From Mytilus trossulus (taxonomy: Eukaryota), in the NCBI RefSeq assembly GCF_036588685.1, contig NC_086382.1, positions 64,666,001 through 64,730,000 of the forward strand: a stretch of DNA of 64,000 nt, in the 5' to 3' direction. The position numbers and the translations under genes are program-made. Shown one piece after another: positions 37,001 to 58,572 of the stretch. How positions within the stretch are numbered: position 1 is the first letter of the stretch; the number at the start of each line of letters is the position of its first letter. The notes under the pieces are model-generated. The model did no database searches and had not been told where the DNA came from. It saw only the letters and a list, made by a program, of their open reading frames with translations.

Positions 37001-40000
37001 GATCAGTCCGTCCCTCTAAAGATCTCAATTCTCTTGATATAAAATATGCTGGTATGTATGCTGTTATTTTAATAGTTAATTCGTCCTCTAAAGATCTCAA
37101 TTCTCTGGACATCAACTATGCTGGTATGTATGCTGATAGTTATAGTTAATATAACCAAGATCAGTCCGTCCCTCTAAAGATCTCAATTCTCTGGATATCA
37201 AATATGCTGGTATGTAGGCTCCTATTTTAATAGTTAATTCGTCTTATAAAGATCTCAATTCTCTTGATATAAAATATGCTGGTATGTATGGTCCCTATAA
37301 AGATCTCAATTCTCTGGATATCAAATATGCTGGTATGTATGGTCCCTCTAAAGATCTCAATTCTCTGGATATCAAATATGCTGGTATGTATGCTGTGATA
37401 TAGATAGTTAATATAACCCATATTCCAGAAAGTGACATTCATTTTTTGAATTGGTAGTTTGTCAAAATAATTGAGGACGTTTTACACATTTCATGGTCAG
37501 AATTCAGAAGAACTGTTTGGATTTACCTTCACCCAATGCCGAATATTAAGTCAAGGATGTAAAAGACCCGACTCTATTGGTGAATGAAAATGGAAATACG
37601 AATATCTTGCATGAATATTTGTTGAAAGTAAATTATGCTCTAAGAGTCCCCTGTCATCAGCTCTAAAGACGGTACTAGAAAGGAACCTTTATTTTCACTT
37701 GGTTTATATTTAAAGGATTTAGCAGGACTACTAGTTTTTTCAGTATCGACAGATTTGAAAATAAAGGATTATCTATTTATGATGTCATTAAAAAGTTTTG
37801 TACGTAATATATTATTTATTTGTCAGTAGAGATGAAAGTGATTTTCATCTTCTAATGTTTTACGTGTAAGACATGTTCTTTGGTATCGATGTATTTTCAG
37901 ATATCTACCCTTTTTATGATAAAATTAGGGTATTAATAGAGTATGGAATCTGAATCTGAATCTGCTTATTAAAACTAGATGCAAATTTAAAAGACACCCT
38001 TAACAAACATGTAAAATTATTGAATTAAAGAAAGACGAACAAAATAATAATATATAACTTGCATTGTTGTTATATTAAGGTCGTACATGGCAGGAGAAAA
38101 TTGAGGATGTTCGCAAGGAAATGACAAAAAAGAATGTAGAAGTCTTAGTAGTAACTGGCGTTGATGAAATTGCATGCAAGTATAAACAGTAATATGTTCA
38201 AATATCACTTTTACTATTATTGTTAAATGATAGACCGTTCTTGTATCATTACTTCAAATTTATTCACACAAAACAACGATATCTTTAATCTACTATTTTG
38301 TACATTGTTTTCAATTAGAAACCCACTGAGAAAAATTCCAAAAGGAGAAGCAAGAATTATAATGGAATGCGATATGTTTATTCCTTCTACTTTTATGTTT
38401 TCATCTTTAAAATGACTATCTTTTCCAAAAGAATAAAATACTAACAATTAATTCTAATTTATAAAACTGTAAATGGACTAACACCTGATTACTAAGCAAT
38501 GCTAAATATTGATGATGTGCAACACCACAATTTACGACCTGTCTCTAATAATGATCTTTTCGTTCCAAGACCAAATACAAGTTTTTATAAAAAATCTTTT
38601 CATTATTCTTTAACCAAAGTATGGAATAATTTACCACTCGAAAAAAAAAATGTCGTCATGTGGAATTCTGTAAGAAACATTGTTGTACTCATTTTCCTGA
38701 ATATTGCAAGTCAAATAATTTGTTTTTCTGTAACAAAACTTTATCAAATATTAAAGAATTACTGTCTTTTGATGAAGATAATGTGTGGTTTTATTGACTT
38801 TTGAAAAACTGATATTCACTGAGGCCAACGGCCGAGGTGAATATTTGTTGTTTTAAAAGGCAATTAAACTACAAATTTACAGAAACAAAAGACAGTAATT
38901 GTTTTATTCCATACTCTAAGAGAAATGAATGTGATGGAAAATATTTACCAAAACCAATTGTACATCAAACGTTTACACCAAAATTATACACGTAAAAGCA
39001 CGCGACGTTTTTCGCGGTGAATATCTTTGTTCCGCAGGTGAATATGCTAAAATTCTAATCCCATTCATATAGAAAAACAGTCTAATATTTTATCAATATG
39101 GAATAATGCCATTTATTACCATTTGTATATTTAAATAATTGAATTGTGTATATACTAGTTATATATATTTAAGGAATAACAGTACTGTAGTTGAAGAGTT
39201 ACCTTCGTCAATTGTAGATTTGACGGTCGCAAATGCAGTTTTACTGGCGACGCGTAGCGGAGACAGTAAAACGGAGATTTGCGACCGTCAAATCAAAATT
39301 GACGGTGGCAGCTCTTCAACTACAGTACTGTTATTCCGATTCTAATGCATTACAAAAAGAAAAATACGATAAAACTTGAAAAATGTCTAAATTTGTCAAA
39401 AAAAATCAATCCGCGAAACTTCATGAATGATTTTGGCACAAAGACATCCTGGCTAAACGTGACGTCATACACATGAAAACTTACAAACTGGAGGTTATTG
39501 CGTTACCTGTACGCTTCAAATTCGGATAAAAATACATTAAAACGGCGAATTCGAGGTAGGTGTTGTTTTATTTTCGATTATATAGTAGTTATCGAACATT
39601 TGTTGATTCATCAATTCTAAATGGCGGGTCCCACCTTAGTTACGCCTGGTCAACTGTGGATTTGACGGCAACTTTCAGCCAATGAAAAAAATTGTTACAT
39701 CCAAATTGCATTAGAATGTAATATATATTGTATTGTAATGTATGAATGTATGAATGTTAACTGTATGCATGTATTTTGTTTGAAGGCCTTAATAAAAGTT
39801 AGACTAGTTATAATTGAGTTACCCTCTTTAAATAAAGAATTTATCATTATTATTATTATTATTATTTATAAATAATAAGTTGGGTACACGTCGACGCAAG
39901 AAAGGAGTAGGTTCAGTAAGACCCCTTTTTGTCCCCGAATTATATCAGTTTTACAAAATTGGTATAGTGTAAACTTTAAGCAATTTATGGAAAGTAGAAT

Positions 40001-43000
40001 AATTTTGCTACATAAATATGGGCTGTTTTTGACGATCTAATGCACATATATTTGATACTAACATGATTAACTCATGCTAAACTCTGAAATCTGCACAATT
40101 TTAGCATTTGAGTTACATTTTAAACGGTTTTCGTCCTAAATGAAAGTGTGGCATATTTGATAGATTTTTCATATTTAAGCTTGAATGAGAGCGTCTGAAA
40201 TTGCTAGAACATTTCAAATCTTTAACACAAACTAATTGAATTGACTGATTGAATCACTTAAGTGTTTAAAAAGTGTATACAATCTTTCATTAGATGAACC
40301 TAAAACTTGAGGCCTAAACAGGCCCTTACTGGACCTACTCCTTTCATTTCTTTGCCCTTCAAAATACGTGTAAACTAAAAATACAGGGTATGCATAATGC
40401 TAGACAATCAAATGAAATAAACCAAAATTGTATAGAACATGAGTAAAGGAAAATGTTTGAAATACATCAATGAGTAATCAGATTAAAAAATCTAGGTAAC
40501 TTTTCAGGTCAACATAATATACTCAAACTTTCAGTTAATGAATTTCATATCTTTTTCAGGGCTATTCAATGTACGAGGAAAGGACTTTGCGAATAAACCA
40601 TACTTTTATTCCTTTGTTTCTATAGATAAAAACTCTGTCAGGTGAATTTTACTGTATATTGGGTTTTAAGTTTTGGTAAGAGTTCTTTTGAAGGTTATCG
40701 ATAAGAGTCATGTAGAATTGATTCATGAAGGCCAATTTAACAGTATATTTTGCAATGTTATTTGAAGTACTAGTATATGGACACGATAAAAGTATACTGA
40801 CAATTATTATTAACAACTCAAATGTTGGAAACGAAAACTATGTTCAAAATTAATCTAGGTCAATACAAATATGAATTAAACTGGTTAGGACAACGTGTTT
40901 CACAAAACCACTCTTTTGAAATTCTCAAGGTTCTTGACTTCTTTAAGTCGTATGTCAGTATGTCAGAAATTGAGCATAACCATACACATGTAATTCATTA
41001 AAAGTGAAAGAAGGATATACACTATATAAATATATTCATAAAGGCATACACTTATCATAAAGGAAAACACATATTCTCCTGTACATTTACTGTGAAACAG
41101 TTTAATACTGAGACCAGAATCGTAAGTATTAGTTACTTAGTTACTTAAACACGTATACTATCTTATGCAATGCCTTCACTTCAGAGTCTGTTGCATTTAT
41201 ACATTACCGCTGTAAAAAATGTACCATTGATACTACTTTTGATATAGGTCTTATACATGCTATTGCATTTATGTGTTTTACAGCCTATACATCATTGACA
41301 GCAAATCTAAGCTAAATAAAGTCCCGACAGATCCAGAATCAAAACAAAAATTGAAAGATCATTTGAAGACAGGTGCAGATGGCAAATGTACCGGGGAATG
41401 TGTACAGGTATTTAAAAAGTAATTAAAAATGAAAAAAAAAATGGATACAAGTACGTACTCCATACAAATTGCTTGCATCAAAATCACTCCTTCAATATGG
41501 AAATATTTGATTTTATACGATGCAGTTAATATTTAACTTTTAGGATTTCTCATTTATCAAATACTTATTATAATAAAAATAAAGTAATTCGAAATAGATC
41601 AACATAAACTAATTATTCCACACAGGTTGTTTTATTTAAAAGCACATATTCATCATTAAGTTATTTGGCTTACTATGATGATGCAATTATCAAAAGTATG
41701 TTTTTGAGATGTTCTCATTTATTTTAAAGTATTTATTACAGTTTGAAACATGTCAGTATTTTAGGCATGCAAGTTGTTTGATTTTCGTAATAAATAGCAA
41801 GAGAGAGAAACGAGAGAATCTTCGAAGTTTTAGGAATGAAAGTTGTTAATTATTCTTAACAAGAGAGATAGATTAACGTCTGCTTAATTCCTAATTCTGT
41901 TTGGTCATTTTGTCGTTTTGTAACTATAATTATAGGTAATGGAATATGATCACAATCAGTTTGCCCTCAACATAGCTTCATTAGCAAAGAAGTCAACAGG
42001 AAGAATCTGGCTGTCCTATGATTGTAATTATAAACTGTACTCTGTAATTCCAAAAGTAAGTCCTTGAGAAAAATGTGGTTATTTGAAGAATAATTGATGG
42101 TTATGTAATGTCAAGTGGCAAAAACATCTGAAAGAATAAAAAGAAATTGTTTACAGACAAGATAAAAATGATTTATCAATTATGTTATGTAAGAAAGTAC
42201 ATTCTTTCCCGTATCAGTGTACTTCAAAAAATTGAGAAACACATTTTCAACAAAAAGTTTGTTAAACAAGGCTTGAGTAAGGACTCATCTTTTCATGGCG
42301 AAATGCTCGCTAAACTTTAAGAAAGTTTAATTTTCCCGTCCAATCTTGTACTACTTATTTATAGTTTCGTTATGAAATATTCATTTTCTAGGAGTTATTT
42401 ATAAATGTCAATTTCTGTCATTCTACCTAATAAATTACAACATGAAATTGAAATTTGAATTTAAGTAAAATGAACAAATTTGCTAGAACCCACAATTCAG
42501 TTTTGGGATGTCGCATTGCGGTGATTGAAAAAACAAATTTAAACGTTATGTTCTATTCTTGTTTTTGTAACTTAATATTTGCTTATTTTTGTATACTCTT
42601 GAATTGTCAAACCGAAACAAAACTGCGCTGATTCTTGAGACTTCCGTAGGTTTGTTGTCTGCGCGTTTGTCATACATAGATAATAGTGCGTTGGTAAACA
42701 ATAACCTTCATACATATTTGAAATATATGGCAATCAATATATTTGTCTATATTGTATACTAATCTATCTAGACATTTCCTAAGAAAGAAGTTATAAAAGT
42801 GGGCTTAGAAGAAAAAATGCTAAATTGTCTGACATCTTTTTCATAATCCAATTTCAACGACTTTGTGTCAATTTCATTATTTTTACACAATATTCAGATT
42901 GTGTTCCAACATGTTAAAAAGTATATTAACATTACAAGAGAAATTCAATAAGTGTAAGTCCATAAAAGCTGACAGACCAAACGTTGTCAATCGACACAAC

Positions 43001-46000
43001 AAGTGAATAACGGACATATTCCTGACCAAACGTATTTATATGTGACATACCGTACTAATAATTGTATTTTATACCGACAAAGTATTTGAATTCGATGCGA
43101 CTGTCATACAAGTGAGAGGTTTAGTTAGCTATAAAACCAGGTTCAAACCCCCTTTTCTACATAAGAAAATGCCTGTACTAAGTCAGGAATATGACATTTA
43201 TTTTCCTCGTTTGATATGTTTGAGCTTTTGATTTCGCCATTGATAAGGGACTATTCTTTTGAATTTTCCTCGGAGTTCAGTAGTTTTCTTATTTTTCATT
43301 TTGACGAAGTGTATGAATAATATACTAATATAGTAATAAGTTGTGGTTTGCCGATAGAGCATCAATTCGACAGACAACTGTTTCAATTTTAATTATTCTG
43401 AGTATGTCAGAGTATAATAGTTATCAAAGAGCATAGCATTTTGTTCGTAGCTGTTATATCATAACAAACACGAAGTTGTGTTATTTAGTTCGACTTTGAA
43501 ATATTTGTGTTATCCATTTTTTTTAGGAAAAAGTGTACCAAGCAATTCCACCTACATTGTATTTAAAAGCTAGAAAGAATTTTATTGAAAGGAACGGAAT
43601 GAGAAATTCAAATGTAAGTGGACAATGATTATACTGATTAGAAATTAAAAAAAAAAAAGAATTTTGGAATTATGTCTTTACAAAAGCAAGATTTTATATG
43701 ACTCAAAACAATTCCCTGTATGTAAAACATGCTCTGTTTAATGAGATAATGTAATTGATCTTACAAAATATCATTGGGAATAGCGATGTAAAGCGTACAT
43801 TTTGTTTGTTTGATATAACTGCAAAAAGAAGAATATGTTTAGAATATTTGTTAAGGGTCCTTACCAAATGAAGATTCCACCTCATCACAATATCTTCATT
43901 GGAAAATTGTACAGAAAATGTAACTTTCTATTTTCAGCTTTTGGATTCGGTTGTTATAGTTGAATTTTTTGCAAGACTTGAAAAAGAGGTAAAATTACAT
44001 AATATTAAATTAAAATTGTGGTAGTCATTTGTGCAATCAGTTAACTGGTAATAAATGTGAAATAATACGTGATAGAAACGTTAATCTACTAACCCACAAA
44101 GGACTTATAAATGCGCTTCAATTACTATTAAAGTAATTCAATCAGGCAGACGAATAAACACTTAAATGTTATATTTAATCATAGATGATCTCACAGAAAA
44201 CAATGCAGCTATAAAGAAATGGCTAAATTAATTAATTCAGAGCATCATCAAACACATATCCGATATCTTTGTCATTCTTTTAAATAAAATCATAAATAAG
44301 GCACATCCTTTTATTTCTTATACATAGTAGTAAAATCGAGATTTAAACAATCATTTGTACTATACTTTTTAAAATTCAAATTATTCTAACATAAGTATTC
44401 TTTCAACAAACTTTATGTAAACAAAATCATCGATTGTTTTTAAAACTACGGCTGTCAGCAGTCACAGATTCGTCAATATTTTGTGAAAATGTTTGAATAA
44501 TTCATACAATTTGTTCTCGGTACCTTTTTCCTTAAATTTGATTCTTTTTTGTTCAAAATTTTATACGAAAAGATAACTTCATACAATCAGTAGATTAGAA
44601 ACTACTGTAGCAACAACATTATGTAAGGCATAAGGGACACTATAGGACGTAAAATGAAAAGAAAAACAAACCCAACACATAAAACACTCTAAGAAATAAA
44701 AAATTCACTGTGCCGTTTGTTTTCAATTTTCAATTTTTATGTAATAATTAATAAAGATCGATGCAAAAGTCGTAACATAAAGGCAGCACTGTTAAACGCA
44801 ACAGGTATAAGCTTGACAGACTATCTTAGTGCACCATTGACATAGTGTTCCATTTGGAAGTACATGCTTACTTCTTCCAATTCAAGTTTATACTTTTTTT
44901 GAACCACGCCAGATTTGTGCTAAAAGTCTTTCATTAGGATCTAATATAAAAAGAAGACGTGGTATGATTGCCAATGAGACAACTATCCACAAATTTAAAG
45001 ACCAAAATGACACAAACATTAACAACTATAGGTCACCGTACGGCCTTCAACAATGAGCAAAGCCCATACCACATAGTCATCTATAAAAGACCCCGATAAG
45101 ACAATGTAAAACAATTCAAACGAGAAAACTAACGGCCTTATTTATGTAAAAAAATGAACGAAAAACAAATATGTTACACATAAACAAACGAGAACCACTG
45201 AATTACATGCTCCTGACTTGGGACAGGCACATACATAAGTAGTGTGGCGGGGTTAAACATATTAGCGGGATTCCAATACTCCCCCTAACCTGGGACAGTG
45301 GCATAACAGTACAAGATAAGAACGAACTATAAAAATCAGTTGAAAAAGGCTTAACTCATCAGATAGACAAAACATACAAGTGGACGTGGCCGGGTACTTA
45401 TACTTTTACTGTTGAATAGTTTTATGTGATATCAGTTTGACGTGGCTCGGTACTTATACATCTCGTCAATGTGTTTGTATTGGCTTTCATTTTTTTGTGG
45501 TTTGTTTTGTATATGCGACTTTTTGTATTTCTTTTGTTCTTATTACATGACTCTGTAATTTAAAAAGATCCCGTCAGTATTATATTGGTCTATTATATGT
45601 CATTATGATATATTTCTATTATGAATTACTATATACGTTGAACCACAAACGTCAAAATCATTCAATCGCGCAGTGGTATTAAAACTTTTTGGATTCTCAT
45701 AAATTCTACCTATAACTTTTGGACTAGTTTGAATATCGGTCTATTTCTGTAATTTATTCTTACATACTTTTGACTTTTTAACCCTGTATGCTGACATTGC
45801 CTATGTAAATTTTAAAACTGTTTGTATGCACATTGAACGACAAATTTATGTGACGTATAAAATTTTCTGACGTCAGACACTCAAATCAATTAATGTGTTC
45901 GTAGATAGAAGATGTTTTTGTGTTCGGTTAAATTGTCCCCTTTTAAAATTGTTATACGATGATGACTGATGTACCCATATTTTGACTATTTTATTAATTG

Positions 46001-49000
46001 TTACTGTTTATTTGACGCATCATGTAAATATAACGGAATTTGATGAGACTGTTATTAAAGTGAGAGGGTTAGCGCTATAGAACCAGGTTTAATCCACAGT
46101 TTTATACATTTGAAAATGCCTGTACCAAGTCAGAAATATGACAGTTCTTGTCCATTCGTTTTTGATGCATTTTGTTATTTGATTTTGCCATGTATTACGG
46201 ACTTTCCTAATTGATTTTCCTCTGAGTAAAGTATTTTTGTGACTTTACTTTTTATTCATCCCGACACAAAAAGACATAATGAACAGATCTGAGAGTACTA
46301 GCATGCTATTGTTTCCATATAGAATTCAGTTCTGATACTTTTTAAAACAGTATTTTTACATGCCGAATTGGTTGAATTTTTTATAAAGATTTTTATTCGA
46401 AAGCATCATTATGAAACATTTACATTTTCTTGAGTAGACCATTAAAATATAAACAAGATCAAATACTTAGCTGAGCATATTTGACGCTCATTTTAATTTA
46501 CCATTTTCAAATATAATATTTATTGGAGAAAAAGCTCCATACCCCAGAACCATAAAAGAGGGACGAAAGATACCGAGGGGACAGTCAAACTCATAAATCT
46601 AAAATAAACTGACAACACTATGGCTTAAAATGAAAAGACAAACAGATAAACAATAGTACACCTGCCACAACATAAAACACTAAAGAATAAACAACACGAA
46701 CCCAACCACAAAGTAGGGGTGATCTCAGGTGCTCTGGAAGGGTAAGCAGATCCTGCTCCACATATAGCACCGTTTGTTGCTTATGTGATAACAATTCCGG
46801 TAAATAGTCTAATTCGGTAGGTCACATTCATGAAAGGGAAGGGGATTGTAGTTACGACGTAAGGAACATATCCGATATCATTTGTGAAACGGTTATTCCG
46901 TAACGGTTAACCAACTCATGATGGCGTCCGTAAAATTAACGAAGGGATGATTACAACTTTACCATTTGGAACTCTTGGTTTAATAGCTTCCTTGTGAGCA
47001 GCAACCCTCTATCAAGAAAATCATGATAGGAAATGCAAGCACTGCAATATTGTATCAATTGGGAGATATTTATCCAGTATGCTGGTTTTGCTGGAATAAT
47101 TTACGATCGATCAAACGTGACTATCGAACATTTCACATTTAATTGTGTTGATACAAAAAAAAAATGTCGAGCACATAAAAGAGCGATGTTAGAACTTTAT
47201 TGCCCTGAAATGCTTTTTGCTTTCTATTTTATAATTCAAATGAAAATACTTCCCAAATAGATATAAGAGAATGTTTTACTAGGTTGTCATGACGGAATAA
47301 AACTATATCTTGTTCACCTCGATGTTACATTTTGAACACTTTCATGCAGTTTGTCACGAAGCATCTGTGTTGCTGCTTGATTTGTCTACTAATGGAAGCT
47401 ATTGAAATAAAATACAAATTATTGTCGCTGTCGTTTATTGTAATTTTTCTCAAAATTACGGCATTGAACAATAGAAAAAACAGAGGGATAAAAGATATCC
47501 GCCTTGTTTTCCTCCATTGACATTTTAAAAGTCTTCAGAAAATACTTCAGATTTCACGCGAAGGCGGACTGCCTTATAATTTGTTTTTATCATATTTATC
47601 GCTTTGTTTCTTGTTCAAGATTCTTCTCTCTACATCTAACTATTGTAATGGGAAATTTTTCTTTTCTTGTTCTGTCTTAGTTTATTTTACAAAAACACAT
47701 GTTTGGTACGAAATACAATATAGCAGTTAAATGAAACTGAAAAGATAATTTATTATACTAATCGAATAACTCACAAAAGAAAAATAAAGTGTGGAGTACT
47801 TTGTCAAAATTATCCTGGTACCTTTGATAACTGTTTTTAAAAATGTCCATCTCTCATGTATATAACGGTGTCATTTTCTCCATATCTGTGTAAAAAGTAA
47901 AATGCAAAAGTATCGAATTCTCATAGAAATTACGATCGGAAAATCCCATTTCAAATGGGAAAATCCAAATCTCAAAGCAAATCAAACGAAGTGAGAACAT
48001 CTGACGTGTATGGTATTACTGGATTTCCTACCATGATCTTTAGAATAACAAATGGAGGCGGCAAAAAAACGTTCATTGTTGCTTGAATTTTGAGATATAA
48101 AATCAACGACTTAACATTTCAAAATGATTATGCCTTGGTATTACATAAAGAAATATGTAATAATTGTTTATATGCCAAAAAAGTCTCATTATCAAAATTA
48201 CAAAATCATTTTAACATGTTGAATTACTTTTGAATTTGTTTTTTAGTTCAATATGAACATATCATTTGACATATTTAGTGCAATCATAATAAAATTACAA
48301 GAATATGACATTTTATTTACGATATCTGTCATAATTCATACTATCGTATGCAATGTGAACGTTCCTTTTGTTTTAACAGATATTAGAAGGTATTCCCTGG
48401 ACAGTTCATCAAGCTGCAGAAGAAGCTATTAAAGTGAGAAGGTTAGTTGCATTGTGATAAGTCATCAATTATCCAAACTGAGAAATGTATTTCACTCTAT
48501 ATAGCGCTGATTCCTTTTCCGGGTTTAGCATGACTTCAGTTCTTCTTGGTTTTATAAGCTCATTACAGTTTGCATGTATATTTCAAATATATCGCCTCGA
48601 TCATCTCAGAGGAGAAATTTATTATCTTAATGCGCATATGGTGCAATGATATTGGTACTGTTAAATTTGACTTATGAATCACTTGATTGAAACGCCAAAG
48701 AGGTTAACTTATTTTTAGAAGTCTTTGTTTTTATAATCGTTTTCCTTCTTGAGCTCCATTTTTTGAATTTCCAAATTGAAACCACATATTAAGTTACAAC
48801 TTGGGTATTTCCTTCAAAATTTTGTGTTTGAAATACCGACTCAACGATATTTCAAATTAACTTTTAAGACCAGAGATACTAACAAGCATGACAGCTACTA
48901 GTATACAACAATGATTTTAAAATGCAAAGTACATAGACGGTATGAAAAAGATAAGGAGGACTAATATATAACAGTAATAAAATATTATGAGGTTTTAAAA

Positions 49001-52000
49001 ATGTTTTGAATAATACAGCAGGTCATTAAAAGTCATAAATTCACAGTCAAGGTAGTAATGGCATATTAATCCAGTATAATGCATCATTGTCGGGTGAACA
49101 AGTCCAGGAATTTGTTTTTGTTATAAAGGGTAATTTTTTTAATTTTTTATAGATAAAAGTAGTCATGGTACATTTTAGTGTCTTCAAATATTTTTCTAAA
49201 GATGTCAAAAATGTTAAAAAAGCTCGAATGTTAATCCTTTTAGTCATTTGAACAAAATTATGATTGTAGTCGATCACTGAGTCTATACAGAGACCAAAGT
49301 TTCAACACTTTATCTGGAAGCGGACACAGAGGTGCCGACTTTCGTTATCATCCTTCCGCGGAAACAGATCATGATATAACAACAACAGAAATATTCAATC
49401 AAGATAGTGGCGGACAGTATCTGTGAGTGTTGTTTTCTACAGGCTTTTAATTTTTTGCAATTAAAGTAATACAAAAATAGGATACCTTTTGTCTTTATTT
49501 GACATATGTATTCTTTCAATTGAAAATATGAATTCATAATCATTAAAATTCATGAATATCACACCACCTTACTCGATGCTTATCCACAGGAACGCTTGAA
49601 AACCAAATACAAGAAGAATGTTGAAAATATAAGTAACTTAAATATAACACACGCAGAAGAACCAAACACTGTAATGAAGAAGTCCCGTTGGATTTATTGT
49701 CAGTACGGGATTATACTATGAAGCCATGTCGAATCGAAATGGATCATTTAAATCGGATGTTCCATACGGAGTGTAAAGCAATAACATGGCTTTAATCATT
49801 ATCCCCAGATGCATTCTTGTTAATAAGTTTTTATCGTCATTACTTCTTCATTGTTGCATTTTCCGTAGAAATAATTTTGCACGAAACTTAGTTTCTTTGA
49901 ATATATATCATCAATCATTTAAAGTTGGTCATTTTCAAAAGTCTTTATGAAACCTGTTAATTGACTGCGTGGCAGAATCTACCCAACAGCTGTTGGAATC
50001 TTAGCTTCACTCTTGTGACAGTTTTTGGCAAGGCCTTCCAAATTAATTTCCATCTTTTGTTTCTCCTTGTTACAGTTATTTTATACAAATATTAAGGATG
50101 AATATGGTATTTTAATTATTTGTTTATTTACTCTTAACCCGAACGCATAGTTCGTTACATTTTTCTTCAATAATACATAACAGAATGACTTTATATTTGT
50201 TGAATAGCTTGACCATGAAGAGTTGTGATGTGCAATCTGGCATACCTATTTGTTTTGTAGATTCTTTGTTTTAATATGTTAGATGGACTTATATATTTCG
50301 TAATAAATTTTACATGAACAATTTAACAAAAAGACTTCAGACTAGACTAGCAGATACACATCGACAAAATGCAATTTGTGAGCATTTTCCTGATTTGTCA
50401 AATACTTACCTAGCTGTACTTAGTCATGCTATATCGACTAGGTTTAGTTACATATACTTTCTTTGTTAGTCTTTGTTTCACTGACAAATAAGGGAGGGGG
50501 TTGATTGTTGGTTCTCTGTTGTACTGAAAGTCTAGTTTACCATTGTTTCTGTATTTCTGTATATTTTGTATTTTAACATATCTACCGATTATCTAATGAT
50601 ATTAAAAATGTATTTGTGTATTATTTTAGAGATGGAACAAGTGATTTAACAAGGACCTTTCACTACGGGAATGCTACTGAACACGAAAAGGTATTTACTT
50701 AAAAGACGCAAACTAGAAAGTCATTAAAAAGTATTTGACAGCATAAAAAAGATTTTTGCATACAAAATATGTCAATGATTGGATAATCATATAATAATTG
50801 TTCATTTGAGAATACATGCATCATTCAGAATATATGCTATGAAACTAATATACTTTTTTTCATTTTTAGGAAATGTATACAAGGGTTCTGATGGCTCATA
50901 TCAACCTATCAAACTTGAAATTTCCGGTAGGACAAACAGGTAACTACTTGCTTATGTAATCACCCAACATAATCATCTCTTAATCCTTTTAAGATGAATA
51001 TTTTTCATCAATAGAATGTTATGAAGCTAAGTTTATTGAAAACATCCTAATTGAAATAATAAAACAAAAGTAAAGCGATTAGTTGAAGTAGTGCAATTTT
51101 GAAATACACATAAGATAACAAGGTAAAGGCGGACTACAGTTTGAATTGCAATTAATTAATTGAATGAAGGACTATTGTATCTGAAGTTAATTATGAAAAA
51201 TTTGAAATTTTGAAAAATTGTAATGAGTGACTTTCATTTATGTGATAGTTTGAGACGGAGTAATCTCTTCAATCTCTCATGACAACTGAAATACTGTTAT
51301 GCAACATTTATTGTTTGTCTAAGACATAGTTCAAAATCAAATTACAGATAAATGCAGAAAAAGCAGAATGACTTTGTCAGAAACTGTTGTTTCTCATATA
51401 CGTTGGATCATTTTCAATAACGCACATCAGTTTCCATTTTGGTTTTCAGTTCTTTAATTTACGGATTTCTGCCTAAAGTCACGTCAAATGTCGACCACTC
51501 ATTCTTGAGAGTTTTGAAAAAGTTGTGAATTAGTATCTCATGTGAATGTTATAAAGTTTAATACTATTAACTCCTTTCTCTGAAACACTTTATTTCTTAG
51601 TTGCTTCTTTTATTCCTACAGAGCGAAATTTAATGGCGACTGATAGCATTTGCTAAAAGGTATTGTAACATTTTCACATAAATCTAAGCATTATAGTGAC
51701 TTGCTATACAACCTTGATATATTGTTATTTTAGGGAGAGCAATTGACGCGGTATCACGTGAACCCCTGTGGGAAGTAGGCGTTGACTATATGCATGAAAC
51801 AGGTCATGGTATATCTCATAATGGAGCTGTAGTAGAAGGTAGCCAATTATTATGAATGTTTGTTTTTTTAAATAGTGTTGATTAATAATAGTTATCATAT
51901 GGAGATATTATAAATTAGGAGTGGAACAATAATTCTTGTGTATGAAGTCTGAAAACTAATTCGATCACTTGTTTGATACACACCAAAAAATGCGAATATT

Positions 52001-55000
52001 AATTGAAATATGAAATAGAAAAATCCATTGTTCACATTTGATTTGTCATTAATATAAAGAAATTAAAATAAATGCTGTATCTTATCATGTTTTTCTACTG
52101 GCTTATCTATTATCGGATAAATATTTTGTATTTTTTGTAAACCTCTGCTCGCTTTGTTGTTGTGATTCAAAAAAGCCAAAACCAAATCGATGTGACGAGT
52201 ACGCATTTAATTAATTGTGCTATTTGAAATTAATTTACCTTAATTGATTTTGTTTATTTCCGAATATTGATGTGGTCATTGATTCTCAAAATTTTAGTTC
52301 CTTAACTGTGGTTCTTTTAAGTAAAGTCGACCTAAGACGGTGCGTGTATTGCGTCAACAGCTTGTTTGCTTTTCTATTTGGCCTCTCACAGTTTTTGGTG
52401 TTGAAAACATGATGACTTTGGTTTGAACTAAAACTGGAACACGATTTATGTGCTACTACTTCATATGGTACCACCATTTCGTATTGTATCACAACATCGT
52501 ATTGTAATTGTATTGTATCGTATGTACAACCGTATCGTATTGTACTTGTGACGTATCTTATTGTACTTATTTTAAACTTCCTACTGTAATCTGTAGTGTT
52601 GTTGAAGTTTCCTCAGTATCCAAAAGCAATTGTAGATACACTGTTTGATATAAGAATACACATTTTTTTCAAACGTTATTTCATAATTTGTTATAAAAAC
52701 GAGCTTTTACTCCCTAACTGAATGTTGTGTGTACAGTTATGTTTTATCGAGTGTTTCGTGACCAGCGAAGTAAACAAAAATTAACATACATGTATGCATA
52801 TTTGTACATTATTTGCTGACCATAATACAAAGAATGAGTTAAAAGTTATATTAATTGTTCAAAGATTGATGAAAAAACACAACAAACAACATTGATTTAT
52901 TCTTGTAAAATATGAGTACGAAATAAATATAGAATTAAGAAGAGTTGAACAAATTATCTATATTATTGAAGCAGTAATAGGCCTACACATAGAATTTTTT
53001 TGTTTGATGAATGACAAATATCAATCATAAACGTATCAAATTCTAGCAGTTTTCCAAATAATCATCCACTTTCTACGACGTATAATTCCCTATAAAGATG
53101 GTAAAAATGTAACTTGTCTTTTTAATACAGATAATAACTATTAATATAAAAAATTGTTAACCGAATTATTTTTCAAAAGATTGTAGACATTTTATTTCAA
53201 ATTAGTTTCTGAAGAAATATTTCGTATTTCAATAACATTTCAGTTAATTAGACAGTTTATCTCGATTTAAACACAAAAAGAACACAGTTGAAAGGAAATA
53301 TGATAGAAAATGAGACAAAGTACATATAAATAAAGTTTTAAATCAGTAGAGTGGAGGAGAATACCACAGGGATAGTCAACTCATAAGTCGACAACATACT
53401 GATATTACTTATATAAAAAAAACCACATGAACAACGTTGATATTGTAATGATAGTACTAGTTACATAATGTGTTTGTGACCTTATACGATGTATAAGGGG
53501 TAAATATCGTATTAAGTCACAAGCACACTATTTTACGAATTTATCTTATCGACTATCTTTATTTGTTGAATTTAGACTATAGTTGTTTCATTTTCAACCA
53601 TACCACATCTTCTTATTTTTATATTAAAGTGTTAAAGTGTTCAATTTTAATACCTTTTTCCATTGGTCTGCACAGAACTAATGTCAACAATAACAACATA
53701 ATATATCAACCTTGATATAACAATATCAAACCGAACTTTCAATACATTTAAATAATCAAACAGTGCTCAAATAACTCCATTTCTTACTGTGCATTGAACT
53801 ACGCCCAGCCTCCCTACTAACCTAATATAGAATATGCACGGTCTCCACGCGGACGCTTTTCACCAATTGTATTCTGGAAATGTAAAGGAAGTAAATCAAT
53901 GTACGAAGCCAAAATGGACAGTTTACAAATGAAATTTTCATATGCATTTTGTAATCAACAGATTTATGTAGAAAGATCTTTAAAAACTCAAAATGTTTTT
54001 TTTTCTATTTCATATTTTTCTATTTTTTTTACAAGGACCAGCATCGATTTCATGTATTGAAGAAACCCACATGAGCGATGTTAAATTGGATGCAAGTTTG
54101 TTTGGAGGAGGTATACTTTTTGATATGCAATGCATTTATTGCAAATGATACTTCCCAAAATTTATTATAAAATAAAACTACTTTTTCGAAGCATGTACAT
54201 CTTTGACCCTTTTGTGTTTTAGTCCTCTCAAATATTTAACATTTTGTTTACAAGTCAACTTATTTGTCCCGAACGTATCTTTACTAGAAAATTCTGTCGT
54301 GGGCACGGTTAGCGATGCCACACGTATTCTATTTACTCTTATTCGAAATATTTTCAGGGTCTATTATAAATTTAAATTGTAGATGACAATCAATTAGAAC
54401 GTGTACCAGACAATGCTGACTATCCCATAAACGAACACATGTGCTTTACTACAGGTAATGATATATGTCTTTAACAACTTTCTTTACAGAGTATCGTGCA
54501 TACTTTGTGTGTTTTATCTCTGCTTCATTCCAGTCATAAGTAGAGTTGTAAATGGGTTTAACCATTTTACGGAAAACGAACTATGCTCGTTTCACTCATG
54601 GATATATAGATTCAAAAAATTAAGCAAACTGAATATGAAAAGTGAAGTAGAAAAATGACATTTAATTTAAGAGTTCCCATATTCATCCATTTCTTCAAAT
54701 TCAAAATGCATTAGTGGAAGAGAAACAAGACCGCATTATACAAAGAAAAACGGCGAAAACAAAAACAGCAGTCTTCAATACACAACAGAAAATCCTAAGA
54801 TTGAGCAAGACGAAATCCAGCAATAATTCTGTGATGATCTCTTGTAAGTCCTCTGTAAATGAGTATATTGGAATGTCTTTTTAGAAGAAAGAAAAAATCA
54901 TATTTTGTAATACAACAAACATATTTATTCACTGTTAATAATGTTAACAGATTATACTGCAATTTGTGAATTTTAGATTAGGAGTTAACAAAGCATGTGT

Positions 55001-58000
55001 GCACTTTGAATATGTAATGAGAATAACATATTTCAAAACATGCCTTATTTCACACGAGTTACCAGTTTACAACTTGAGGCTATTTCATTTTCAGATGCAA
55101 AATAAAATAATGGAATGCCTCGAAATATAAGATATTTAAATACATCATTTTAAGGATAAACAAGTGCAGAAGCATTTATGAAAGTCATTAACTGCCAATT
55201 ATTCTCATATGTACAATTCAATGTTCAGTTCATGTTGAAATTGCATAATAAAGTGAATAGTATGTATTTATTCAAAAAAGTGAGGCGTTTTCTTAAGAAT
55301 TTTCTTATCAGTTTTTCTTTTAAAACTTGACATAGCACAAACCTATACTGTACAACTCGGATGTTTTGGGTAATTCAATATATAAAGAATTGTTTATTCT
55401 ACGACAAATTCGTTCCTCATATAAGATATCAAAAGCGTTAACATGGTTTAAAAGAAAACTGACTGAAATAAACAAAATTTTGATAACAAGTAAAGTCATA
55501 AAACGCATAATTCTATATTGTACACATAATTATAATTAATGAAATATTTCAACAGTTTTTGTCCAATTGACAAACCTTATAAATATGCTCTTAGATAATA
55601 AACTTTATGGTTGTTGGAATATATAAAGCATTATCAATAATCAAACATAAAAAAGGTTACATGTAACGGAATAAAAAGGAAATTAGTATCATAACTGGTT
55701 GAAACAACTTACATATATGAAGTATAAGTAATATTCCAGAATCATCTTTGTGGTAAGCCTATAAACTGATTGACTGTTGGTTACTAAAAGTATAGTGCCG
55801 GTAGGTTTATGAATTATTTAGGAGTATTGTGAATTTATAAATGTGATAAATATTTAAACTAGTTAAAATTTCTTTGAATACATGAACTAAAATAGCAGTC
55901 TTAAGATAACTAACACCTTATTTCAGAGCCAGGGTATTATGAAGAAGGATATTTTGGGATAAGAATAGAGAACGTTATGATTGTTCGGAAATGTAAACAG
56001 AAGGTACGGTTATGTTGTCGTTATTTCAAATTGTAGGAACTTGTGTATGATAAAAGCATGTCTTTGTTAAAGTTCTATGTTACAATGTTTTTTCAAGCAT
56101 TCTTTCCAAACAGAAGTAACCGATATATCTGGGGAATTGAAGTTTATTTACTGTTCGTGACATTTTCATCTGCTGAAATGTCTTTATTAATATTTTTAAA
56201 GTTTCACCCTAAACTCCAAAGTCAATACGATACTGTCAATGTAACCTTAAGGTAGATTCAACATATTCTACTGCAAAATCACACGCGGAGAGTATGCAAT
56301 AAACTTCTAATAAATCTTCATACTTATTTGTTCATTTATTGTTTTTCAAAAGACAATGTTGGAAACAGCTGTTTATAAAAACATAATAACGAGAATAGGA
56401 CATTACAAGCTCGAAATAAAACTGTCATTTTCCCAAATAAATAATTTACGACATAAAGAAAATAAGCTTGCACACGATTACTTCTTCGAAACACTATTTT
56501 TGTCAAATTCCGATCATTAATATAGAAGGACATGAACTAGTATTTAGACTTATTTCAAAGTTTATTACTCTTGGTATTTAAACATGTTGTTCAGATAACA
56601 TGCTTTCAACGATCTCTGATCATTATTTTGTATTCTTTTTAGTACAATATCTCATCTCATCATTTCCTGGAGTTTGAAACTGTCACCTTTATCCCATATG
56701 AACCAAAACTGATTACCTATGATATCATGAGTCAATCTGAAGTAAGTGATTTATGCACTTGATATTGAACGTTAACAAGTTCACAGAATTAAGTTTTTTT
56801 CATTACTAACGTACTTGCATTAATCATATGTGGATTCTAAAAATAAGTCTAAGGGACTTTTTAAAATATTTTAAAATCGCGCTCTTTCTTTGAAAAATAT
56901 TCTATCAAAATCTATATTTGTAAGCCATTTATACCACAAATGTTAAATCTGAAAATCTTCTAAAATAAATAACACACGATGCTTTTCAATATAAAAAATG
57001 GAAGTAAACGTTTTGGAATACAAAAAGACATATTTTGTTAAAAGTGTAAGGAACAAGTGACCAGTATGCTGGAGTTTCATATTGATAACAAATTAGTTGT
57101 ATATGAATGTAGATAAAGGAAGATGTGGTGTGAGTGCCAATGAGACAACTCTCCATCCAAATAACAATTTAAAAAAAAAGTAAACCATTATAGGTCAATG
57201 TACGGCCTTCAACACGGAGCCTTGGCTCACACCGAACAACAAGCTATAAAGGGCCCAAAATTACTAGTGTAAATCATTCAAACGGGAAAACCAACGGTCT
57301 AATCTATATTAAAAAAAGCGAGAAACGAGAAACACGTATATATTACATAAACAAACAACAACTACTGTACATCAGATTCCTGACTTAGGACAGGTGCAAA
57401 CATTTGGAGCGGGATTAAACGTTTTTATGGATCCAAACCTTCTCCCTTTTTCTGAAAAAATAGCATAACATCACAACATAGAAAAACACACGATAAAATA
57501 TCAATTGGCAGACTTAACTCAATCAAAAAACGTAAATCAAAACACAATGAACGAATAAATTTGATCTGCGATATATGAATGCAAATGCACAGTTAATAAA
57601 ATATAAGAGACAAACATTCAAGTAGACTGTTTCATTAAGTATCGTCATTCCTGGTGAAACAAACTGATTTCTTTATCTAGCAATATGTAGAGTACATGGG
57701 AACAGTCACATAACTCGACAATCCCAATATAAAGGGACATAATTGAAACTGAATCGTATTATGTCTAGTTCCAAATTGTTTTTATGCCCCATCTACGATA
57801 GTAGAGGGGCATTATGTTTTCTGGTCTGTGCGTCCGTTCGTCCGTCTTTTCGTTCATCTGTCCGTTCGTTCGTCCGTCTGTCCCGCTTCAGGTTAAAGTT
57901 TTTTGTCAAGGTAGTTTTTGATAAAGTTAAAGTCAAATCAACTTGAAACTTAGTATACATGTTCCCTTTGATAAGATCATTCTAAACTTAATGCCAAATT

Positions 58001-58572
58001 AGAGAATTTATTCCAATTTCACGGTCCACTCAACATAGAAAATGATAGTGCGAGTGGGGCATCCGTGTACTGTGGACACATTCTTGTTTAAAAGTGTTTC
58101 TGATGCTTCAAATAACATTCAAAGGTAGATGAGGCGTAAACAATTTGCAACTGGAAGTGAATATCCTATAGCAGCTCCTAGACTAACACAGTTGTTTGAC
58201 ATATAGGACTGTATAAAAAAGCTGTCTTACTTGCATCGTTGCGACTTTATCGGAAATACACATACTTATTCATCCGTATTAAAACTTATTTTATTATATC
58301 AGAATATAGTGAAGACCAGTGGCATTAACAATTATAAAACTATTTCTGCACAATTGAATGAATATTAATCAAAATTGCTATTCGATTTTATTTGTTTGCA
58401 GGTTGATTGGATGAATAGTTATCACCAAGAAGTCTGGGACAAGGTGTCGCCATTGCTGAAAAAGAAAAATAATAATGTTGCATTAGAATGGCTTCATAAA
58501 AGAGTACAACCAGTGTATTTACACCATAATATTCATAGTTTTTACGAAAACAGTGATAAAATAGAGTTATGA
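28081..58572 (+). CDS. Xaa-Pro aminopeptidase-like protein (peptidase M24B, XPNPEP1/2 family) with signal peptide and altered active site; 718 aa
   Basis: 23 exons: 28081-28117, 29616-29707, 30152-30247, 33930-34002, 34462-34566, 35947-36048, 36456-36602, 38080-38175 (GC donor), 40560-40641, 41284-41407, 41936-42055, 43527-43613, 43938-43988, 48380-48441, 49270-49422, 50630-50690, 50870-50939, 51734-51838, 54036-54110, 54383-54454, 55927-56003, 56643-56741, 58402-58572; 2157 nt, open throughout. Family motifs: DAYII, LWTDGR, DLVDEIW, DEIAWLFNVRG, DSGGQYLDGTSDLTRT, TGHG, EPGYYEEGYFGIRIEN. Confidence 0.92.
30940..32660 (-). mobile_element. Internal fragment of a non-LTR retrotransposon ORF2 (RT domain), frameshifted, in intron 3 of the peptidase gene
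   Basis: APGPDG, YRPISLTSVVSKLMERIV, QEGFRQ, FIDFEKAYDSIW, GLPQGSVLSPILFNIF, KFADD, ILGVTLDQKL. Frameshift near 31735; both ends truncated. Confidence 0.9.
33079..33485. repeat. Diverged direct duplication (~130 bp) plus a 19-bp tandem duplication
   Basis: 33079-33213 resembles 33359-33485; CTTTACATCGAGGCTTATT occurs twice at 33229-33266. Confidence 0.6.
34938..35240. repeat. Interspersed repeat family copy
   Basis: AAATAAAGGCAACAGTAGTATACCGCTGTTCAAAACTCATAAATCC...; related to 9111-9480. Confidence 0.6.
36548..37420 (+). repeat. Tandem array (12 units, ~51-86 bp) derived from the 3' end of exon 7 and its splice donor
   Basis: Core TCCCTCTAAAGATCTCAATTCTCTGGATAT(A/C)AAATATGCTG|GTATGTA. The first unit is coding (RPSKDLNSLDIKYAG). 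Confidence 0.95.
38753..39106. mobile_element. Non-autonomous hairpin-type DNA element
   Basis: AATTACTGTCTTTTG...ATATTCAC-(GAGGCCAACGGCCGAG)-GTGAATAT...CAAAAGACAGTAATT fold-back followed by a tail. Confidence 0.5.
39172..39717. mobile_element. Non-autonomous hairpin-type DNA element
   Basis: ~165-bp fold-back GGAATAACAGTACTGTAGTTGAAGAG...CTCTTCAACTACAGTACTGTTATTCC, followed by an ATTCTAATGC...GCATTAGAAT inverted pair. Confidence 0.65.
39902..40343. mobile_element. MITE
   Basis: TIRs AAGGAGTAGGTTCAGTAAGACC / GGCCCTTACTGGACCTACTCCTT. Confidence 0.7.
44944..46300 (-). mobile_element. SINE-like element interrupted by a second repeat (~45404-46254)
   Basis: 44944-45403 matches the 11161 family. 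The insert's distal part (~46020-46250) matches 43090-43290. The host appears to resume at CATCCCGACACAAAAAG. Confidence 0.6.
46555..47100 (-). mobile_element. 3' portion of a Penelope-like retroelement-derived repeat
   Basis: Highly similar to 59366-59890. The minus strand encodes a decayed RT C-terminus (YHDFLDRGLLLTRKLLNQEFQMVKL). Confidence 0.7.
57114..57600 (-). mobile_element. SINE-like repeat, related subfamily
   Basis: AAGGAAGATGTGGTGTGAGTGCCAATGAGACAACTCTCC...GTACGGCCTTCAACA...TTCCTGACTTAGGACAGG. Confidence 0.7.
57779..58089 (+). mobile_element. Helentron-associated (HINE/pearl-like) non-autonomous element
   Basis: T-rich insertion site, 5' ATGCCCC...GGGGCAT hairpin, (CGTC/CGTT)n microsatellite, 3' GGGGCAT plus a short terminal stem-loop. 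Confidence 0.7.

What the first reader, a model, noticed from the sequence alone, without database searches (positions are those of the whole stretch)
49270..51838. Intact aminopeptidase-P homologue keeps all five metal ligands but has lost two conserved active-site histidines
Seen: the spliced frame retains D (DSGGQY), D (GTSD), H (TGHG), E (EPGYY) and E (RIEN), with D-D and E-E at the family spacing. The GPNxAIIHY motif reads GHRGADFRY (CGT at 49343-49345, exactly 20 residues before the first Asp). NVHEGP reads AVVEGP (GTA at 51832-51834), and HGTGH reads HETGH. Known: these positions correspond to H395/H498 of human XPNPEP1 (H243/H361 of E. coli PepP), which are important for substrate binding and catalysis. 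Inference: 23 clean exons argue against a dead gene, so this may be a metal-binding pseudo-peptidase or an enzyme with new chemistry. Nearby new His residues (GHRG, RYH, GISH) could partly compensate.
Basis: partly seen in the sequence, partly recalled or inferred. Interest (0 to 1): 0.85.

Follow-up and report, generated by a model that had tools for sequence, protein, structure and literature searches.

The report
Histidine-less aminopeptidase P paralogue, expressed
This is a real, spliced and conserved gene for a relative of the proline-specific enzyme aminopeptidase P that keeps its metal-binding residues but has lost two histidines the enzyme needs, so it is probably a non-cutting "pseudo-enzyme" or a re-tooled enzyme limited to one animal lineage.

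Summary
On the + strand, about 30.15-58.57 kb, lies an XPNPEP2-like (M24B) gene. I could model 21 exons (675 codons) with no stop. By alignment to human XPNPEP1 (3CTZ), H395 is Arg (CGT 49343-49345) and H498 is Val (GTA 51832-51834). HGTGH reads HETGH. All five metal ligands keep the family spacing.

Spliced contigs from four public runs, carrying three coded organism labels, join exons A-B-C-D-F-G' with GT..AG borders and keep these codons. So the gene is transcribed.

The change is old and maintained:
- A second gene on contig C1 shares both His losses, HETGH and an extra 24-codon exon before EPGYY.
- The two genes are 59% identical, with dN 0.33 and saturated dS. They are sisters (support 100) on a long stem.
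- Three other same-genome paralogues are canonical.
- Exon fragments from other genomes keep the full HETGHGISHNGAVVEG block, but show R, N or G at the H395 site.

The acidic N-domain partner of H498 is also gone. Only the His of GISH is conserved in this clade.

Best reading: a maintained, metal-binding pseudo-aminopeptidase. A re-tooled active enzyme is not excluded. Structure and activity were not tested.

The parts
30152..30247 (+). Exon E2, N-terminal domain (first exon I could place; the start-codon exon was not found)
   Evidence: tblastx, collinear with the C1 paralogue at 58% identity. AG/GT borders and open frame.
33930..34002 (+). Exon E3. The region that holds HQSEY (the E41 partner of H498) in canonical enzymes has no acidic residue here.
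   Evidence: The canonical paralogue reads HQ|SEY.
34462..34566 (+). Exon E4 (LWTDGR motif of the N-terminal domain)
   Evidence: tblastn against P0011, 50% identity, E 1e-6.
35947..36048 (+). Exon E5
36456..36602 (+). Exon E6. Its 3' end plus donor site is repeated in tandem downstream, to about 37420.
   Evidence: (repeated ..SLDIKYAG hits).
38080..38175 (+). Exon E7, followed by a GC-AG intron (donor GCAAGT)
   Evidence: The junction restores the canonical DEIAW|LFN.
40560..40641 (+). Exon E8
41284..41407 (+). Exon E9
   Evidence: tblastx against C1, 57% identity.
41936..42055 (+). Exon E10
43527..43613 (+). Exon E11
43938..43988 (+). Exon E12
48380..48441 (+). Exon E13
   Evidence: tblastx against C1, 59% identity.
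49270..49422 (+). Exon A: GHRGADFRY (Arg, CGT 49343-49345, at the H395 site) and DSGGQY (metal ligand D415)
   Evidence: Alignment to 3ctz. Spliced contigs in runs X1, X2, X6 and X7, with the Arg codon unchanged in X1, X2 and X6 (X7's contig starts after the codon).
50630..50690 (+). Exon B: DGTSD (metal ligand D426)
   Evidence: Joints 49422>50630 and 50688>50868, both GT..AG. tblastn.
50870..50939 (+). Exon C
   Evidence: Joints. 74% identity to C1.
51734..51838 (+). Exon D: W477 equivalent, HETGHG (H485, G486>E, metal ligand H489), GISH, and AVVEG (Val, GTA 51832-51834, at the H498 site)
   Evidence: Alignments to 3ctz and 4s2r. No letter differences in the X1 and X2 contigs. Orthologue fragments P0036-38 are identical across this motif.
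54036..54110 (+). Exon F (GPASIS...), equivalent to the canonical exon that leads to EPGYY
   Evidence: Joint 51838>54036, GT..AG, in X1 and X6.
54383..54454 (+). Exon G': clade-specific extra exon of 24 codons, inserted just before EPGYY
   Evidence: Joint 54110>54383, GT..AG, in X1, X2 and X6. Matched only in the C1 paralogue, not in canonical paralogues.
55927..56003 (+). Exon E: EPGYY (E523, Y527) and GIRIEN (R535, E537)
   Evidence: Pfam PF00557 profile positions 187-207.
56643..56741 (+). Exon H: start of the Peptidase_M24_C region
   Evidence: PF16188, 29.4 bits against a cut-off of 28.9.
58402..58572 (+). Last exon: rest of Peptidase_M24_C. It ends ...SDKIEL then stop, with no hydrophobic tail.
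   Evidence: PF16188, 40.1 bits. Compared with the paralogues' tails.

Best explanation
The window encodes one of two sister genes. Both descend from a membrane-type aminopeptidase P (XPNPEP2-like, MEROPS M24B) within a local family of at least five genes.

The shared features of the two genes place these changes in their common ancestor:
- both second-shell histidines were lost (H395 and H498 in human XPNPEP1 numbering; H243 and H361 in E. coli PepP);
- the acidic N-domain residue that hydrogen-bonds H498 was lost;
- Gly became Glu in HGTGH;
- a 24-codon exon was added just before EPGYY.

The following were kept: the five ligands of the two-metal centre, H485, Y527, R535 and the dimer-interface Trp.

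Shown here: the gene is open, spliced, transcribed and conserved.

Inferred: the protein still folds as a pita-bread domain and binds metal, but hydrolyses Xaa-Pro peptides very poorly, because both histidines are required in characterised enzymes. It would then act without cutting, in one of two ways:
- as a binder of Xaa-Pro N-termini;
- as a partner that dimerises with active paralogues, as proposed for C. elegans PID-5 with APP-1.

The window copy has also lost the hydrophobic GPI-type tail that its relatives keep, so it is probably soluble in the secretory pathway.
For: - Residue mapping: exon-level alignments to 3ctz and 4s2r and to canonical P0011.
- Intactness: 675 codons without a stop; 20 introns, 19 with GT and one with GC donors.
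- Transcription and splicing: contigs of 1030-1657 nt in runs X1, X2 and X6, plus a 247-nt contig in X7, skip the introns at GT..AG. The Arg codon is unchanged in organisms A, B and C, and the Val codon in A and B.
- Age and maintenance: the C1 paralogue shares LLAY (no His), HETGHG, VVVEG and exon G'. The two genes are 59% identical over 597 codons, with dN 0.335 and dS saturated. They are sisters with SH-aLRT 100. The stem branch is 0.47, against terminal branches of 0.27 and 0.43, which are similar to those of canonical genes.
- Orthologue fragments: P0036, P0037 and P0038 (79-91% identity) keep HETGHGISHNGAVVEG exactly while the flanks vary. P0039 keeps the C1-type motif; it has 1 change across the exon-coded part and many in the intron-coded flanks.
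- Free H395 site: it reads R, N, G or A across the clade.
- Partner residue lost.
- Literature: His243Ala abolishes E. coli APP activity. His243, His350 and His361 are described as essential. His429 and His532 of pig membrane APP are described as part of the proton relay (PMC10377022, PMC5774706).
Against: - No structure or assay was obtained.
- Strict conservation of all five metal ligands, R535, Y527, H485, the new Glu in HETGH and the His in GISH would also fit an enzyme that still does chemistry at the metal centre.
- Arg at the H395 site recurs in this gene, in organisms A-C and in P0034. It could still hydrogen-bond a substrate carbonyl.
- The start-codon exon was not located, so full intactness and the signal peptide are unproven.
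- The runs are only guessed to be RNA. The spliced contigs are the evidence for that.
- The selection evidence is coarse: dS is saturated, and only six substitutions between close relatives could be classified.
Confidence: 0.55

Rival explanations
1. It is still an active metallohydrolase whose second shell has been rebuilt. The conserved Glu of HETGH, the conserved His of GISH/GIAH and the 24-residue insertion would replace the lost histidines. The result would be altered substrate specificity, or chemistry other than Xaa-Pro aminopeptidase activity.
For: - All five metal ligands, R535, Y527 and H485 are retained in both paralogues and in the orthologue fragments.
- The altered block HETGHGISHNGAVVEG is invariant in three other genomes while its flanks vary.
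- The tree shows a long stem followed by ordinary terminal branches, the pattern expected for a functional shift followed by constraint.
Against: - The H395 site varies freely (R, N, G, A), so no replacement is fixed there.
- The papers read here name both histidines among the conserved or essential active-site residues of the characterised aminopeptidases P. My recollection, not checked here, is that methionine aminopeptidases and prolidases keep the equivalent pair.
- His243Ala alone abolishes activity in E. coli.
- The geometry of the proposed substitutes could not be checked.
Confidence: 0.3
2. It is a transcribed but decaying duplicate, that is, a young pseudogene. The His losses would simply be neutral damage.
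For: - Two residues needed for catalysis are gone, and the H395 site drifts among relatives.
- One contig in run X2 carries an odd insert of 39 nt plus 7 nt that would shift the frame.
Against: - There is no stop or frameshift in 675 codons.
- The same losses occur in a sister gene that is only 59% identical, with dS saturated. The state has therefore been kept open for a very long time.
- Exon-coded parts are conserved far better than intron-coded flanks in P0036 and P0039.
- In run X6, exons differ from the window at about 3% and intron contigs at about 7% (table 8).
Confidence: 0.07
3. The His-less reading comes from a wrong exon choice. Alternative exons carrying the canonical histidines would be used in the real mRNA.
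For: Canonical paralogues of this family do have tandem duplicated exons: two exon-A copies in L009, and two candidate exon-F copies in L007.
Against: - tblastn with canonical proteins finds only one exon-A-like and one exon-D-like segment in the whole window.
- Contigs from four runs use exactly these exons.
Confidence: 0.03

Closest known systems
Membrane-bound aminopeptidase P (XPNPEP2; MEROPS M24B)
   Same: - Three-domain layout, collinear with a canonical 615-aa animal enzyme.
- Peptidase_M24_C tail region above the Pfam cut-off.
- All five metal ligands.
- Same-genome relatives, including the C1 sister, end in hydrophobic tails that I read as GPI-signal-like by eye; no predictor was run.
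   Different: - Lacks the equivalents of pig His429 and His532 (human XPNPEP1 H395 and H498).
- Lacks the acidic partner of H498.
- Has Glu in HGTGH.
- Has a 24-codon extra exon before EPGYY.
- The window copy ends in SDKIEL instead of a hydrophobic tail.
Cytosolic aminopeptidase P (human XPNPEP1, PDB 3CTZ; C. elegans APP-1, PDB 4S2R)
   Same: - Best solved-structure matches for exons A and D.
- Same D-D and E-E spacings, and the same 20-residue distance from the H395 site to D415.
- The dimer-interface Trp (W477) is kept.
   Different: - The window gene belongs to a separate same-genome clade (SH-aLRT 99) from the XPNPEP1-like protein P0011.
- The two histidines are missing.
- The loop between the H498 site and E523 is 26 residues longer than in human XPNPEP1.
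PID-5 aminopeptidase-P-related domain of C. elegans ('pseudo-APP')
   Same: - An M24B homologue predicted to be inactive.
- Its His243 equivalent is Ala, as in the C1 paralogue here.
- It is proposed to work by dimerising with the active enzyme (PMC10377022).
   Different: - PID-5 has lost several metal ligands and is predicted to hold at most one Zn.
- It carries an eTudor domain and acts in germ granules.
- The gene here keeps all five ligands. Its close relatives end in hydrophobic, GPI-signal-like tails, but no signal-peptide exon was found.
EBP1/PA2G4 (M24A pseudo-peptidase)
   Same: A pita-bread-fold protein that has given up peptidase activity and uses its former active site for binding (PMC11266112).
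   Different: - It belongs to the methionine-aminopeptidase branch.
- It retains only two of five metal ligands.
- It is cytosolic and ribosome-bound.

Membership tests
Aminopeptidase P, MEROPS M24B (XPNPEP1/2 type) | Pita-bread catalytic domain (Pfam PF00557) | tested here: inconclusive
   Tested exon by exon only. Exons A, D and E match profile positions 44-85, 132-159 and 187-207 in the correct order, at 14.7, 14.7 and 13.3 bits. Each is below the 23-bit cut-off, although their rough sum is above it. PDB phmmer matches: 3ctz at E 1.7e-3 and 1.7e-4, 4s2r at 8.9e-5. The joined protein was not searched.
Aminopeptidase P, MEROPS M24B (XPNPEP1/2 type) | C-terminal region specific to this subfamily (Pfam PF16188, Peptidase_M24_C) | tested here: met
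   The last two exons score 29.4 and 40.1 bits against a cut-off of 28.9, covering profile positions 2-27 and 28-62.
Aminopeptidase P, MEROPS M24B (XPNPEP1/2 type) | Three-domain architecture, collinear with canonical enzymes | tested here: met
   tblastn with the canonical 615-aa protein P0011 gives collinear hits covering most of residues 6-614 across the window.
Aminopeptidase P, MEROPS M24B (XPNPEP1/2 type) | Five ligands of the two-metal centre (D415, D426, H489, E523, E537) | tested here: met
   DSGGQY, DGTSD, HETGHG, EPGYY and RIEN are aligned, with D-D spacing 11 and E-E spacing 14.
Aminopeptidase P, MEROPS M24B (XPNPEP1/2 type) | Second-shell catalytic histidines (H395 and H498 in human XPNPEP1; H243 and H361 in E. 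coli) | tested here: not met
   Arg lies at the H395 site and Val at the H498 site. The 20 canonical segments (19 proteins) from the exon-A search all have His at the H395 site, and the canonical paralogues and P0011, P0019 and P0007 read HEG at the H498 site.
Aminopeptidase P, MEROPS M24B (XPNPEP1/2 type) | Proline-pocket and proton-relay residues (H485, Y527, R535) | tested here: met
   The first His of HETGHG, EPGYY and GIRIEN are all present by alignment. Their roles are taken from PMC5774706.
Aminopeptidase P, MEROPS M24B (XPNPEP1/2 type) | Hydrolysis of Xaa-Pro N-termini | not testable with these tools
   This needs recombinant protein and an assay.
Membrane-bound (GPI-anchored) XPNPEP2 subtype | N-terminal signal peptide and C-terminal hydrophobic GPI signal | tested here: not met
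   The window gene ends ...SDKIEL with no hydrophobic tail, whereas the C1 sister and three canonical paralogues have one. The signal-peptide exon was not located.
Pseudo-peptidase (inactive homologue under selection) | Loss of residues required for catalysis, together with evidence of purifying selection and expression | tested here: met
   Residue loss. Expression and splicing. Conservation: dN 0.33 against saturated dS and invariant altered motifs in other genomes. The inactivity itself is inferred, not measured.

The most novel reading that the evidence does not exclude
A secretory-pathway M24B protein keeps a complete two-metal centre but has a rebuilt second shell: both histidines and their acidic partner are gone, a conserved Glu has appeared next to the metal-ligand histidine, and a 24-residue insert sits at the active-site rim. 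On this reading it does one of two things. It catalyses a reaction other than Xaa-Pro aminopeptidase cleavage, or it acts as a metal-dependent, non-cleaving receptor for Xaa-Pro N-termini. It would have evolved once in a mussel lineage and then split into a GPI-anchored form and a soluble form.
Probability: 0.3. Interest if true: 0.7.

Novelty: new variant of a known kind. Interest (0 to 1): 0.45.

Why it matters
Known M24 pseudo-peptidases (EBP1, and the PID-5 domain) have lost metal ligands. Here the metal site is fully kept, while the two histidines that position the substrate and stabilise the intermediate are gone. That state has been maintained in two diverged paralogues and in related genomes.

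This offers a natural experiment on what the second-shell histidines contribute. It also gives a candidate for a metal-dependent peptide-binding protein, or a re-tooled hydrolase, in an invertebrate's secretory pathway. Canonical paralogues in the same genome can serve as built-in controls.

The finding is of specialist interest rather than field-changing.

Tried and rejected
- **Orthologue DNA.** The metagenome scan returned only unrelated 46%-identity hits. Codon-level dN/dS among close orthologues was therefore not possible.
- **dS between the two His-less genes.** It is saturated. NG86 and YN00 failed, and LWL85 gave dS about 1.5. Only an upper bound of about 0.2 on dN/dS can be stated.
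- **First coding exon.** ATG/hydrophobicity/donor scans of 18-30.15 kb gave no convincing candidate. A weak tblastx hit at 28727-28774 does not look coding.
- **Origin of exon G'.** The idea that it is a tandem duplicate of exon F was tested by shuffling. For two comparisons, 317 and 772 of 2000 shuffles reached the observed score. The other two were read in the wrong frame and count for nothing. The idea is not supported.
- **Whole-genome Pfam PF00557 scan.** It did not flag the window copy at all, because the copy is too diverged at single-exon level.
- **Joined model.** The joined spliced protein was not sent to any search, family or folding tool. Searches were done exon by exon, by reference. 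Exons were joined only inside local scripts, for the ORF check, dN/dS and the tree. No structure prediction or superposition on 3CTZ was therefore made.
- **First tree run.** It returned no answer. The quick LG+G4 tree was used instead.
- **Literature.** No paper describing this clade was found.
Full report
**What is in the sequence.** The window is G000:C10:64666001-64730000, with about 30% G+C. A note from another agent of this scan calls the genome a mussel's; I did not test that.

- GHRGADFRY and DSGGQY in exon A;
- DGTSD in exon B;
- HETGHG and AVVEG in exon D;
- EPGYY and GIRIEN in exon E.

**Mapping to known enzymes.**
- phmmer of exon A against PDB aligns it without gaps to residues 377-420 of human XPNPEP1 (3ctz). 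Arg (CGT 49343-49345) falls on H395 and the Asp of DSGGQY on D415.
- Exon D aligns to 3ctz residues 468-492 and to C. elegans APP-1 (4s2r).
- The ungapped continuation, also seen against the canonical 615-aa animal protein P0011, puts HETGHG on H485-G490 and Val (GTA 51832-51834) on H498.
- The spacings D-D = 11, E-E = 14 and H395 site to D415 = 20 are those of the family.
- Pfam, exon by exon, gives collinear but sub-threshold Peptidase_M24 hits for exons A, D and E. The last two exons give above-threshold Peptidase_M24_C hits.
- All 20 canonical segments (from 19 proteins) found with exon A have His at the H395 site.

**Gene model.** I used P0011 and a paralogue as guides and resolved the splice sites by hand. 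The result is a 21-exon model from 30152 to 58572: 2028 nt, 675 codons, no internal stop. Every intron is AG-bounded with a GT donor, except one GC donor (GCAAGT at 38176) that restores the canonical DEIAW|LFN junction. The start-codon exon was not located.

**Transcription.** Runs that hold part of the 3' region were found. Contigs from four of them, carrying three coded organism labels and coming from two studies, were laid on 49200-55199.
- Contigs of 1030-1657 nt (X1, X2, X6) and one of 247 nt (X7) skip the introns at GT..AG and join exons A, B, C and D. Those of X1, X2 and X6 go on through F and an exon I had not predicted, G' (54383-54454).
- Intron-less contigs in several organisms mean spliced RNA.
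- The Arg codon shows no variant in X1, X2 or X6. The exon D pieces of X1 and X2 have no differences at all, so Val is confirmed there.
- In X6, differences close to the ends of a piece are not listed, so the Val codon is not confirmed for that organism.
- Of the six listed exonic differences, four are synonymous and two are not (my reading of the frame).
- X6 exon pieces differ from the window at about 3% (13 of 409 positions). X6 intron pieces differ at about 7% (31 of 448).

**The extra exon.** Exon G' (72 nt) keeps the frame and inserts 24 residues just before EPGYY. The distance from the H498 site to E523 is 51 residues, against 25 in human XPNPEP1. A match to G' exists only in the C1 paralogue. 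A test of whether G' is a duplicate of exon F gave no support.

**Family context.** A search of the whole genome with exon A found four further loci. After fetching them:
- Three genes are canonical: one at C10:62.65-62.68 Mb and a tandem pair at C10:52.77-52.83 Mb. They read IIHY or VIHY, HGTGHG and HEG.
- One gene on C1 (about 87.69-87.72 Mb, minus strand) is His-less like the window gene. It reads LLAY, HETGHG and VVVEG, with all five metal ligands kept.

The window gene and the C1 gene are collinear exon by exon. They are 59% identical over 597 codons, with dN 0.335 and saturated dS. In a quick LG+G4 tree the five same-genome genes form a clade (SH-aLRT 99), separate from the XPNPEP1-like P0011. 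The two His-less genes are sisters (100). Their stem is long (0.47), but their terminal branches (0.27 and 0.43) are ordinary. The acidic residue of HQSEY, which hydrogen-bonds H498 in the human enzyme (PMC5774706), is present in a canonical paralogue and absent from both His-less genes.

**Relatives in other genomes.** Genomic ORF fragments gave the following:
- For exon A, the H395 site reads N (P0001 cluster, 9 members), G (P0002) and R (P0034), while the rest of the exon is 79-88% identical.
- For exon D, three genomes (P0036-38, 79-91% identity) all read HETGHGISHNGAVVEG.
- A C1-type fragment (P0039) has one change across the exon-coded part, against many in the intron-coded flanks.

So the altered metal-side motif is under strong constraint, and the H395 site is free.

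**The "compensating histidines".**
- The His of GHRG is not conserved: Ala in P0002, Ile in C1.
- The His of RYH corresponds to the second His of the canonical HYHPS, so it is not new.
- The His of GISH is conserved in both His-less genes and in their orthologue fragments. It is absent from the same-genome canonical genes and present in C. elegans APP-1. Its geometry could not be assessed.

**Localisation.** The C1 sister and the three canonical genes end in hydrophobic tails, which I take to be GPI-anchor signals of the XPNPEP2 type. The window gene ends ...SDKIEL. This agrees with another note of the scan on the same window.

**Interpretation.** The literature read here says:
- His243Ala abolishes E. 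coli APP activity.
- His243, His350 and His361 are essential for catalysis and substrate binding.
- The equivalent His429 and His532 of pig membrane APP take part in the proton relay (PMC10377022, PMC5774706).

I therefore rate an Xaa-Pro aminopeptidase with near-normal activity as unlikely. The gene is clearly maintained, so the best reading is a metal-binding pseudo-aminopeptidase. It could bind Xaa-Pro N-termini, or dimerise with active paralogues, as proposed for PID-5 with APP-1; the dimer-interface Trp is kept. The main rival is a re-tooled active enzyme. That reading is favoured by the complete metal site and by the invariant new Glu next to the metal-ligand histidine.

Known M24 pseudo-peptidases (EBP1, PID-5) have lost metal ligands. 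This one has not, which makes it a new variant of a known kind.

**Limits.**
- The joined spliced protein has no reference. It was not sent to any search, family or folding tool, so there is no structure model.
- The runs' RNA status is inferred from splicing.
- The organism labels are coded.

Noticed in passing
window 36548-37420: The 3' end of exon E6 (..SLDIKYAG) plus its GT donor is repeated many times in tandem inside the following intron. tblastn shows repeated hits at about 36612, 36761, 36862, 36911, 37012, 37170 and 37221. This is the feature in scan note s1-830223. Its effect on splicing is unknown.
   Followed up: partly
window 38176-40559: A GC-AG intron with donor GCAAGT. The same DEIAC|K reading appears in the C1 paralogue, so the GC donor may be conserved there.
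   Followed up: partly
window 58402-58572 versus L005, L002, L003, L004: The window gene ends in SDKIEL with no hydrophobic tail. Its His-less sister and the three canonical paralogues all end in hydrophobic, GPI-signal-like tails. This suggests a switch from membrane-anchored to soluble or ER-retained.
   Followed up: partly
L009 7296-7442 and 7070-7204 (minus strand); L007 7014-7103 and 7163-7366: Canonical paralogues carry tandem duplicated exons: two exon-A copies, and two candidate exon-F copies, each with intact motifs. They may be mutually exclusive alternative exons. The gene in L009 also has two exon-C-like hits.
   Followed up: no
window 53400-53999: Contigs pile up here to summed depths in the hundreds to thousands in all four runs, with many loose ends. 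This is a highly expressed or highly repeated element inside the D-F intron.
   Followed up: no
window 51838-54036 (run X2) and 49395 (runs X1, X2): One X2 contig inserts 7 unmatched letters plus 52873-52911 between exons D and F. The total of 46 nt would shift the frame. Separate X1 and X2 contigs follow exon A only to 49395 and then diverge. These could be aberrant isoforms, alleles or assembly chimeras.
   Followed up: no
window about 60650-61230: An open stretch on the + strand contains a ..FVDFEKAFD.. segment, which I recall as a reverse-transcriptase motif. It lies downstream of the gene and is probably a retroelement.
   Followed up: no
window 23326-23422, 43104-43302, 45985-46254: Short intronic or upstream segments are 65-93% identical, at translated level, to segments of the C1 locus. 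They occur out of order relative to the gene, so they are shared dispersed repeats rather than exons.
   Followed up: no
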